In this document: positions 10,342 to 10,898 of the stretch, one piece after another | Layout of the letters: each line of letters starts with the position of its first letter | Position numbering within the stretch: position 1 is the first letter of the stretch | Assembly (NCBI RefSeq): GCF_006345805.1 | Contig: NC_043024.1 | Span: 19,282,001-19,346,000 of the forward strand | DNA length: 64,000 nucleotides | DNA from: Octopus sinensis | Taxonomy: Eukaryota | Direction of reading: 5' to 3' | Notes under the pieces: generated by a model | The model's database searches: none | What the model was told of the DNA's origin: nothing | Seen by the model: only the letters and a program-made list of their open reading frames with translations | Program-made: the position numbers and the translations under genes

Positions 10342-10898
10342 AAATGCCCTGATGCAGTACCAGTCAGTGGCTCTTGTGGCTTCTTAACTTAACTGATTGG
10401 AAGTGTTATCATGTACATTGTTTTGTCTTGGTATAAAAGATGGGCTACAGCAAATATTCTGCTCAATACCACAGATTTGCTTGTCAGTTGTTTGACCTTA
10501 ACCAGGTGAGCATGTCCCTTGGTGGCTGACGATATGTGCATCTCTGATCACGAGCAGAAGTAGTGGGAGAGCATCATAGCCATGTGTTGAGAGGGATTCT
10601 TTGTGTTTGAATAATTCACCTCTGGAAACATGGGTGTTTCATTCAACATCCTTAAACAACCCTTAGTCAAGGACCTTTTGAGCGGGATGGGCTACTCAAC
10701 CTGAAGAAAATTCTAACTGGGCCCCACCTGCAAGGTCATGTGCTGTTTATTTTGATATGAGATCACCATGTCGCGCACATATGGTTGTGATGCATGTGCC
10801 TAGCGTACCCTTATCAGACTGGTAGTCATGATGGGAATACTGGGCTTCGTATATTTTACCCCAGTGTCACTTTGATGGCATGCACTGCTCTCTCACTC
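10342..10898 (+). mobile_element. Element D, apparently full length
   Basis: Starts AAATGCCCTGATGCAG and ends GCACTGCTCTCTCACTC, with (AAT)n on both sides; same termini as 46721-47277. Confidence 0.85.

What the first reader, a model, noticed from the sequence alone, without database searches (positions are those of the whole stretch)
10342..10898. A ~555-bp non-coding element with fixed ends that occurs only inside (TAA)n
Seen: five copies (2390 on minus; 10342, 15176, 22787 and 46721 on plus). All have the same 3' end (GCACTGCTCTCTCACTC), with AAT repeats on the sense strand on both sides, the same polarity as the Dong copies. Three are 5'-truncated and two share an identical 5' start, suggesting a defined full-length unit. 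No ORF, no obvious tRNA A/B boxes and no similarity to the three Dong 3' UTRs in the window were seen. A CAGTG/CACTG hairpin sits at the 3' end. Three copies lie within ~80 bp of a Dong-family end. Inference: a non-autonomous, non-tRNA retroposon parasitising the TAA-specific R4/Dong machinery.
Basis: partly seen in the sequence, partly recalled or inferred. Interest (0 to 1): 0.7.

Follow-up and report, generated by a model that had tools for sequence, protein, structure and literature searches.

The report
TAA-repeat-specific non-coding retroposon in octopus
A roughly 557-base non-coding mobile element in an octopus genome lands only inside TAA microsatellites, in the same orientation as the Dong-type jumping genes beside it, so it most likely borrows their copying machinery; it is a real but fairly ordinary new repeat family.

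Summary
The window comes from Octopus bimaculoides or a very close relative. It carries five independent copies of one non-coding element, 91-96% identical to each other. All five share the same 3' terminus. Two reach the same 5' nucleotide (557 bp) and three are 5'-truncated at different points. Every copy has (AAT)n on its sense strand on both sides.

The element has no ORF, no tRNA or other small-RNA head, no Rfam match, no terminal inverted repeats and no similarity to the neighbouring LINEs. Those LINEs have an R2-like reverse transcriptase plus a CCHC and PD-D-K restriction-like endonuclease. They sit in (TAA)n with the same polarity, as do three of four 50-54%-identical relatives fetched from other organisms.

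The best reading is a non-autonomous non-LTR retroposon copied into TAA repeats in trans by Dong/R4-type LINEs. Recognition probably goes through the (UAA)n tail, because two Dong subfamilies here already have unrelated 3' UTRs. Trans-mobilisation itself is inferred, not shown.

I found no HDV-like ribozyme at the 5' end. The octopus genome could not be reached, so no genome-wide census or search for a parent LINE was possible. I rate it a new member of a known kind, of moderate interest.

The parts
10342..10898 (+). Copy A, full-length unit (557 bp): 5' AAATGCCCTGATGCAG ... GCACTGCTCTCTCACTC 3'
46721..47277 (+). Copy C, full length, same 5' start as A. It has a 2-bp deletion in the 3'-terminal 17-mer and is 92% identical to A
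2390..2892 (-). Copy B, 5'-truncated at element position 57. It lies 36 bp of (TAA)n downstream of a Dong-B-type 3' end
15176..15611 (+). Copy D, 5'-truncated at about position 115 (the junction is ambiguous by a few bases against AAT)
22787..23140 (+). Copy E, 5'-truncated at position 205, preceded by (TAA)9 plus ggataata. It lies about 55 bp upstream of a 5'-truncated Dong-B copy
10071..10341 (+). Upstream (AAT/GAT)n target array of copy A
10899..10965 (+). Downstream (AAT)n array or tail of copy A
46646..46720 (+). (TAA)25 between a Dong-A 3' end (46647) and the 5' end of copy C
47278..47329 (+). Downstream (AAT)17 of copy C
2267..2389 (-). Downstream (AAT)n of copy B, read on the minus strand
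14274..15175 (+). 900-bp degenerate (ATA/TAA)n array upstream of copy D
15612..15765 (+). Downstream (TAA)n of copy D
3134..5428 (-). Dong-A: LINE with restriction-like endonuclease, 5'-truncated inside the reverse transcriptase. It carries CCHC plus RPD...D...K motifs and about 225 bp of 3' UTR ending ...caaaagtcaaacatagaa(TAA)n. It is the putative source type of the machinery
2932..3103 (-). Dong-B-type 3' UTR fragment ending ...gaaagaagaaaaaaaaag(TAA)n, inserted in the TAA tail of Dong-A
23197..24868 (+). Dong-B: 5'-truncated LINE copy (end of the reverse transcriptase, CCHC, PD-D-K endonuclease, about 190 bp of 3' UTR), followed by (TAA)49
46381..46647 (+). Dong-A 3' fragment (last ORF codons plus 3' UTR), flanked by (TAA)n on both sides

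Best explanation
The element is a roughly 557-bp non-coding, non-autonomous non-LTR retroposon of an octopus genome. It is inserted by target-primed reverse transcription specifically into (TAA)n microsatellites, using in trans the reverse transcriptase and restriction-like endonuclease of the Dong/R4-type LINEs that share this target.

Proposed steps:
1. A master copy lying in a TAA array is transcribed. The promoter is unknown and probably not Pol III. The RNA ends in (UAA)n.
2. The Dong protein nicks the (TTA)n strand of a TAA array.
3. The nicked end primes on the (UAA)n tail.
4. Incomplete reverse transcription gives the 5'-truncated copies.
5. Each insertion leaves TAA tracts on both sides that serve as new targets. 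This produces the chains of Dong copies and element copies seen here.

Shown: five independent copies, a fixed 3' end, a defined 5' end, 5' truncations, exclusive TAA context with fixed polarity, no coding capacity, and co-location and shared polarity with TAA-flanked LINEs that carry a restriction-like endonuclease.

Inferred: trans-mobilisation by Dong, tail-based recognition, and the mode of transcription.
For: - Copies, ends and flanks.
- Independence of the insertions: only microsatellite is shared in the flanks.
- No ORF, no tRNA, no Rfam family.
- Two conserved internal TTTT runs at positions 80 and 336.
- No terminal inverted repeats (sequence).
- The neighbouring LINEs have CCHC and RPD..D..K endonuclease motifs. 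Their reverse transcriptase matches R2 proteins best among solved structures (E 1e-15).
- These LINEs are flanked by (TAA)n in sense orientation.
- Three of four fetched relatives (50-54% amino-acid identity, from other organisms) also end at (TAA)n or a short TAA-like tract (L006, L008, L009). The closest, L004 (57%), starts right after (TAA)n, though its 3' flank is not TAA.
- Dong is known to target TAA repeats (PMC3812793, PMC3774820). Dong-R4 is the most active LINE group in Octopus vulgaris (PMC13282606).
- Two Dong subfamilies in the window have unrelated 3' UTRs but the same TAA tail. This fits recognition of the tail rather than of a UTR.
- Element divergence (4-10%) is close to that of the Dong-B fragments (about 8%).
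- Further copies in O. bimaculoides gene models repeat the pattern. P0127 shows the same 3' terminus followed by a TAA run. P0004 shows a 5'-truncated copy preceded by a TAA run.
Against: - The element shares no sequence with either Dong subfamily in the window: not the 3' UTR, not the ORF end, and no 5' end was available to compare. The usual sequence link between a SINE and its partner LINE is therefore missing.
- No promoter and no 5' processing signal was identified. A descriptor for HDV-like ribozymes that recovers the human CPEB3 ribozyme finds nothing at the 5' end of A or C.
- Only two window copies define the 5' end.
- One external copy (P0003) continues upstream into sequence that is at most a short, degenerate TAA-like tract.
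- No genome-wide census was possible.
Confidence: 0.72

Rival explanations
1. It is an internally deleted derivative (SIDE-like) of a third octopus Dong subfamily that is not present in this window. Its first 100-200 bp would come from that LINE's 5' end and the rest from its 3' UTR. This is a special case of the best explanation, differing only in origin and in how the RNA would be recognised (own-UTR recognition).
For: - R2 SIDEs have exactly this architecture (PMC3414825).
- Dong subfamilies here already differ completely in their 3' UTRs, so a third, unseen UTR type is plausible.
- The closest Dong relative found (L004) starts, right after (TAA)n, with CCCTGATG, the same 8-mer as element positions 6-13.
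Against: - Similarity to L004 stops after 8 bases, and another full-length relative (L009) starts differently.
- No ribozyme was found at the 5' end.
- At 557 bp the element is much longer than the roughly 190- and 225-bp Dong 3' UTRs seen here.
- No parent LINE could be examined.
Confidence: 0.3
2. It is simply the 3' end (a long 3' UTR) of an autonomous Dong-type LINE. The five copies are ordinary 5'-truncated LINE copies, and the shared 5' start is a truncation hotspot.
For: - 5' truncation and the fixed 3' end look the same for LINE copies.
- Dong 3' UTRs are highly variable between subfamilies.
Against: - Two independent copies, 8% diverged from each other, end at exactly the same nucleotide against (TAA)n.
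- A third copy (P0003) also reaches this end and then diverges.
- No trace of the conserved Dong C-terminus is present anywhere in the 557 bp. The one 8-residue match has E about 0.5-1.4 and no DNA support.
- The element is 2.5 to 3 times longer than the Dong 3' UTRs seen here.
Confidence: 0.1
3. It is mobilised by some other machinery: a different LINE with a (TAA)n tail (I-clade LINEs end in TAA repeats), or a DNA-level mechanism such as a Helitron or a microsatellite-targeting MULE like the plant SaTar elements.
For: - Microsatellite-targeting DNA transposons exist (PMC5907723, PMC3812793).
- (TAA)n tails alone do not prove TAA targeting.
Against: - The upstream flank is also (TAA)n in all five copies, including the truncated ones.
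- There are no terminal inverted repeats and no Helitron ends (5' TC, 3' CTRR).
- One-sided 5' truncation with a constant 3' end is a reverse-transcription signature.
- The only TAA-flanked coding elements in the window are the LINEs with a restriction-like endonuclease.
Confidence: 0.06

Closest known systems
R2 SIDEs (Short Internally Deleted Elements) of Drosophila (PMC3414825)
   Same: They are short, non-coding, non-autonomous elements without a Pol III head. They insert at the same specific target and in the same orientation as a site-specific LINE with a restriction-like endonuclease. They show LINE-like 5' junction variation.
   Different: SIDEs share the 3' UTR and the 5' HDV-like ribozyme with their parent R2. 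Here no sequence is shared with the Dong copies available and no ribozyme was found. The target is a microsatellite, not rDNA.
Dong (Bombyx mori) and the R4 clade of non-LTR retrotransposons (PMC3812793, PMC3774820)
   Same: It inserts into (TAA)n with fixed polarity, has TAA repeats at both junctions, and shows 5'-truncated copies.
   Different: Dong is autonomous, about 4-5 kb, and encodes a reverse transcriptase and endonuclease. It has a 5' HDV-like ribozyme that cleaves at the TAA/Dong junction. The element is 557 bp, non-coding and without a detectable ribozyme.
Classical SINEs (tRNA-, 7SL-, 5S- or snRNA-headed) with a LINE-derived tail
   Same: It is a non-autonomous retroposon that depends on a LINE and is present in many copies.
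   Different: It has no small-RNA head and no A/B boxes. Internal T4 runs would terminate Pol III. It is longer than most SINEs. No LINE-derived 3' segment is recognisable.
NARTc/RIME-type non-autonomous partners of L1Tc/ingi in trypanosomatids (PMC4035085)
   Same: These are non-coding partners of LINEs, without a Pol III head, that rely on the LINE's proteins.
   Different: They share the 5' Pr77 ribozyme/promoter hallmark with their LINE. No shared 5' hallmark could be shown here.

Membership tests
Non-autonomous non-LTR retroposon (made by target-primed reverse transcription) | Constant 3' end with variable 5' truncation among independent copies | tested here: met
   Five copies share one 3' terminus. 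Their 5' ends lie at positions 1, 1, 57, about 115 and 205. The flanks are unrelated apart from the microsatellite.
Non-autonomous non-LTR retroposon (made by target-primed reverse transcription) | No coding capacity for its own reverse transcriptase or endonuclease | tested here: met
   All six frames of all copies are interrupted by stops, and the longest ORF is 50 aa. The only database matches are spurious octopus gene models.
Dong/R4-dependent (TAA-specific) element | Insertion inside (TAA)n with the same polarity as Dong | tested here: met
   All 10 flanks are (AAT)n on the sense strand. The Dong copies have the same polarity. TAA tracts cover only about 4-8% of the window.
Dong/R4-dependent (TAA-specific) element | A 3' (or 5') sequence shared with the partner LINE | tested here: not met
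   No similarity to Dong-A or Dong-B at the DNA or protein level. Only two subfamilies and no full-length octopus Dong were available.
Dong/R4-dependent (TAA-specific) element | Mobilisation by Dong protein in trans | not testable with these tools
   This needs a retrotransposition assay.
SIDE-like element (internally deleted LINE with restriction-like endonuclease) | A 5' self-cleaving HDV-like ribozyme that defines the 5' end | tested here: inconclusive
   No Rfam ribozyme at E<=10. A nested double-pseudoknot descriptor that recovers the human CPEB3 ribozyme finds no candidate in A or C. A looser version gives chance-level hits that A and C do not share. The descriptor also gave nothing convincing at the 5' ends of two Dong-like LINEs (L004, L009), so its sensitivity for this clade is unproven.
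Classical SINE | A head derived from tRNA, 7SL, 5S or snRNA, with an internal Pol III promoter | tested here: not met
   ARAGORN finds no gene. Rfam gives no match even at E<=10. Conserved internal TTTT runs sit at positions 80 and 336.
Neighbouring LINEs as Dong/R4-clade elements | An R2-group reverse transcriptase followed by a CCHC zinc knuckle and a PD-(D/E)xK restriction-like endonuclease | tested here: met
   The translations show C-x2-C-x7-H-x4-C followed by RPDI..D..K..KY. Pfam finds zf-RVT. The best PDB matches are R2 proteins.
Neighbouring LINEs as Dong/R4-clade elements | Placement inside the R4 clade by reverse-transcriptase phylogeny | not tested
   No reference R4 or Dong protein sequences were at hand. 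The assignment rests on TAA targeting, here and in most of the fetched relatives, and on published octopus repeat annotation (PMC13282606).
DNA transposon or Helitron targeting microsatellites | Terminal inverted repeats, or 5' TC and 3' CTRR ends with a subterminal hairpin | tested here: not met
   The ends are AAATGCCC... and ...CTCTCACTC, with no inverted repeat. The 3' hairpin is not significant.

The most novel reading that the evidence does not exclude
Dong/R4-type LINEs may recognise their template mainly by a (UAA)n tail annealed to the nicked TAA target, rather than by a structured 3' UTR as R2 does. Unrelated RNAs that end in (UAA)n could then be trans-mobilised. This element would be the first described microsatellite-specific, headless non-autonomous partner of the R4 clade, and part of the reason octopus TAA arrays grow into chains of insertions.
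Probability: 0.4. Interest if true: 0.55.

Novelty: new member of a known kind. Interest (0 to 1): 0.38.

Why it matters
If it holds up, this adds a non-autonomous partner to the Dong/R4 clade, for which I found none described in the searchable literature.

It also gives a natural test of how LINEs with a restriction-like endonuclease outside R2 choose their RNA template: by the tail or by the 3' UTR.

In practice the family is mis-annotated as protein in at least eight O. bimaculoides gene models, including an exon of a cGMP-dependent protein kinase model. It also contributes to the TAA-rich, repeat-dense structure of octopus genomes, where Dong-R4 is among the most active LINE groups.

Tried and rejected
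1. Recovering more genomic copies.
- An exact 20-mer scan of JGI metagenome contigs gave three chance matches only, and IMG/VR gave none.
- The look-up of encoding contigs with a window ORF and with four O. bimaculoides spurious proteins found nothing.

2. Chimeric query. I joined all stop-free frames of the element to harvest spurious ORFs. It returned only two extra gene models, P0127 and P0128.

3. HDV-like ribozyme at the 5' end. Rfam at E<=10 found none. My own descriptor scans were at chance level or empty, although the scan recovers the human CPEB3 ribozyme.

4. A possible remnant of the Dong C-terminus (SHVLRGIL against SHVLRRAL). I rejected it: E is about 0.5-1.4 and the DNA alignment is no better than shuffles.

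5. A shared ACTCAATAA end with the element ending at 22751. I rejected it: that sequence is the other end of a SINE-like unit with a (TCA/TGA)n tail in the opposite orientation.

6. The CCCTGATG 8-mer shared with the 5' start of a Dong relative (L004). It does not extend, and L009 lacks it. I kept it only as a lead.

7. The 3' CAGTG/CACTG hairpin and overall RNA structure. The 3' 92-120 nt are not significant. The whole element has z = -2.8, with a long-range pairing of the 3' terminus to positions about 225-235. Five near-identical copies give no power for covariation.

8. Literature. I found no description of a Dong-dependent non-autonomous element.

Full report
**What is there**

A blastn search with 10342-10898 against the window finds five copies and no more (the self-comparison agrees):
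- A, 10342-10898 (+).
- C, 46721-47277 (+).
- B, 2892-2390 (-).
- D, about 15176-15611 (+).
- E, 22787-23140 (+).

A and C are full length and begin at the same nucleotide, (AAT)n|AAATGCCCT. B, D and E begin at element positions 57, about 115 and 205.

All five end with GCACTGCTCTCTCACTC or a close variant. A and B are exact, D and E have one mismatch, and C has a 2-bp deletion. The 17-mer occurs four times where 0.01 is expected.

Pairwise identity is 91-96% (K2P 0.04-0.10). D and E are closest to each other and share diagnostic changes, so there are at least two subfamilies.

All ten flanks are (AAT)n-type arrays on the element's sense strand. Perfect TAA tracts cover only 3.8% of the window. 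Beyond the microsatellite the flanks are unrelated. The copies are therefore independent insertions.

**Source**

A 50-aa antisense pseudo-ORF of the element matches six "uncharacterized proteins" of Octopus bimaculoides at 67-94% identity. Two further O. bimaculoides gene models contain pieces of the element. The window therefore comes from O. bimaculoides or a very close relative.

These spurious proteins act as a few extra copies:
- P0127 reads LLLLL|SERAVH, which is a TAA run directly at the same 3' terminus.
- P0004 is a 5'-truncated copy preceded by an isoleucine run, which is (AAT)n.
- P0003 reaches the same 5' end (..CIRAY) and then continues into sequence that matches nothing in the window. 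That sequence can only be a short, degenerate TAA-like tract.

**What it is not**

- It does not code. Every frame is full of stops.
- It has no small-RNA head. ARAGORN finds no tRNA gene. Rfam finds nothing at gathering scores and nothing meaningful at E<=10 on A or C.
- Pol III is unlikely. Two TTTT runs, at positions 80 and 336, are conserved in the copies that cover them. That argues against Pol III transcription of the whole unit.
- It is not a DNA transposon or Helitron. It has no terminal inverted repeats and no Helitron-type ends.
- It is not a piece of the LINEs in the window. Sensitive blastn and tblastn against them give only chance matches. The one intriguing 8-residue match to the Dong C-terminus has no DNA support.

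**The neighbours**

Two LINE copies lie in the same TAA arrays: 5428-3134 (-) and about 23197-24868 (+), plus several 3' fragments.

Their translations show the end of a reverse transcriptase, then a CCHC motif (C-x2-C-x7-H-x4-C), then RPDI..D..K..KY. This is the restriction-like endonuclease typical of the R2/R4 group. Pfam finds zf-RVT. The best solved-structure matches of the reverse transcriptase are R2 proteins (E 1e-15).

There are two subfamilies with unrelated 3' UTRs:
- Dong-A ends ...caaaagtcaaacatagaa.
- Dong-B ends ...gaaagaagaaaaaaaaag.

Both abut (TAA)n on their sense strand.

The closest proteins in the large database are only 46-57% identical, and none is from an octopus. I fetched four relatives:
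- L006, L008 and L009 end directly at (TAA)n or at a short TAA-like tract.
- L004 and L009 start right after (TAA)n.
- L004's 3' flank is not TAA.
- Loci L006 and L008, from one sample, show several unrelated 3' ends that all abut (TAA)n.

This matches the published behaviour of Dong, which targets TAA microsatellites (PMC3812793). It also fits the report that Dong-R4 is the most active LINE group in O. vulgaris (PMC13282606). I did not run a reverse-transcriptase phylogeny, so the clade assignment rests on domain architecture and target.

**How it most likely works**

The combination points to insertion by target-primed reverse transcription, carried out by a TAA-specific enzyme the element does not encode. 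The relevant features are a constant 3' end, one-sided 5' truncation, a defined full-length end, exclusive TAA context and fixed polarity.

The only such enzyme in sight is the Dong-type LINE. It has the same target and polarity, and its copies lie 36, 75 and about 55 bp from three of the five element copies.

Two Dong subfamilies and the element have three unrelated 3' ends but one common feature, the TAA tail. I therefore favour recognition or priming through a (UAA)n tail that anneals to the nicked (TTA)n strand. Each 3' end does have a hairpin 25-45 nt before the tail, but none is significant. This step is an inference.

The similar divergence of element copies and Dong-B fragments is compatible with activity in the same period.

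Serial insertion into TAA tracts left by earlier insertions would explain the chains seen at 2267-5888, 22752-25016 and 46268-47329.

**Open points**

The 5' end. Bombyx Dong and Ascaris R4 carry an HDV-like ribozyme that cleaves exactly at the 5' junction (PMC3774820). R2 SIDEs keep that ribozyme (PMC3414825). I found none here:
- Rfam is negative.
- A loose nested-pseudoknot descriptor gives chance-level hits that A and C do not share.
- A stricter version that correctly recovers the human CPEB3 ribozyme finds nothing in A or C.
- The same descriptor gave nothing convincing at the 5' ends of two Dong-like LINEs (L004, L009). The negative result is therefore not conclusive.

Origin. The closest Dong relative (L004) begins, right after (TAA)n, with CCCTGATG, the 8-mer at positions 6-13 of the element. 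The similarity does not extend, and L009 starts differently. This is a lead towards a SIDE-like origin, not evidence for it.

Census. The octopus genome could not be reached with these tools. The 5'-end uniformity therefore rests on two window copies plus one external copy.

**Comparison and novelty**

Functionally the closest known things are the R2 SIDEs: headless, non-coding elements that ride a site-specific LINE with a restriction-like endonuclease. The NARTc/RIME type of LINE partner is also close.

The element fails the SINE definition because it has no Pol III head. It fails the sequence-sharing criterion of SIDEs, at least against the Dong copies available.

I found no description of a non-autonomous partner of Dong/R4 in the searchable literature. 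Automated octopus repeat libraries, with hundreds of "unclassified SINE" families (PMC13282606), very probably already contain this family unnamed.

I therefore rate it a new member of a known kind, of moderate interest. The more interesting possibility, tail-only template recognition by Dong-type LINEs, remains open.

Noticed in passing
window 3134-5428 (-), 2932-3103 (-), 23197-24868 (+), 46381-46647 (+), 11609-11864 (-), 11300-11610 (+): Two Dong-like LINE subfamilies share an ORF end (..GT[AS]H[IV]LR..LSM*) but have completely unrelated 3' UTRs. Both abut (TAA)n. Fragments are nested in each other's TAA tails.
   Followed up: partly
window 742-1652, 6216-6678, 33274-33731, 49579-50856: Tandem arrays (2.5 to 7 units) of a 184-185-bp SINE-like unit. 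The unit also occurs as single interspersed copies (for example 19706-19889, 39878-40065, 52677-52850).
   Followed up: no
window e.g. 13609-14038, 26173-26585, 29367-29786, 34074-34503, 52977-53410, 10966-11204: A very abundant interspersed family of about 420 bp, with more than 15 copies at 76-92% identity, containing ...GTTTCAGTCATTTGACTGTGGCCATGCTGGAGCAC.... One copy directly abuts the TAA array downstream of copy A.
   Followed up: no
window 21987-22751: A 590-bp (TCA/GTC)n array is followed by a SINE-like unit of about 175 bp. Read on the other strand, the unit ends in a (TGA)n tail. (GAT)n blocks are also interspersed in many of the TAA arrays. This hints at a second retroposon system tied to a microsatellite.
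   Followed up: no
L004 4030-4037 (ENA ERZ25878469) versus window 10347-10354: The closest Dong relative found (57% amino-acid identity) starts immediately after (TAA)n with CCCTGATG, the same 8-mer as positions 6-13 of the octopus element. The similarity does not extend, and another relative (L009) lacks it.
   Followed up: partly
proteins P0001-P0006, P0127, P0128 (UniProt O. bimaculoides): Pieces of this element are annotated as proteins or as exons of gene models. These include a cGMP-dependent protein kinase model (residues 124-170) and the N-terminus of a Sushi/VWA/EGF protein model. They are likely annotation artefacts or exonisations.
   Followed up: partly
window 10342-10898 (element positions 80, 91, 225-235, 336): Internal features of the element: a perfect TATAAAAG at position 91, about 25 bp upstream of the 5' end of truncated copy D; conserved T4 runs at positions 80 and 336; strong CpG depletion (7 observed, 28 expected); and a predicted 11-bp pairing between AGUGGGAGAGC (around position 225) and the 3'-terminal GCUCUCUCACU.
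   Followed up: partly
window 18565-18664: A run of 100 N, which is an assembly gap.
   Followed up: no
window 63434-63814 (-): A 126-aa ORF with weak matches to C2H2 zinc-finger models, all below the curated Pfam cut-offs. It may be an exon of a host gene or a fragment of a transposable element.
   Followed up: no
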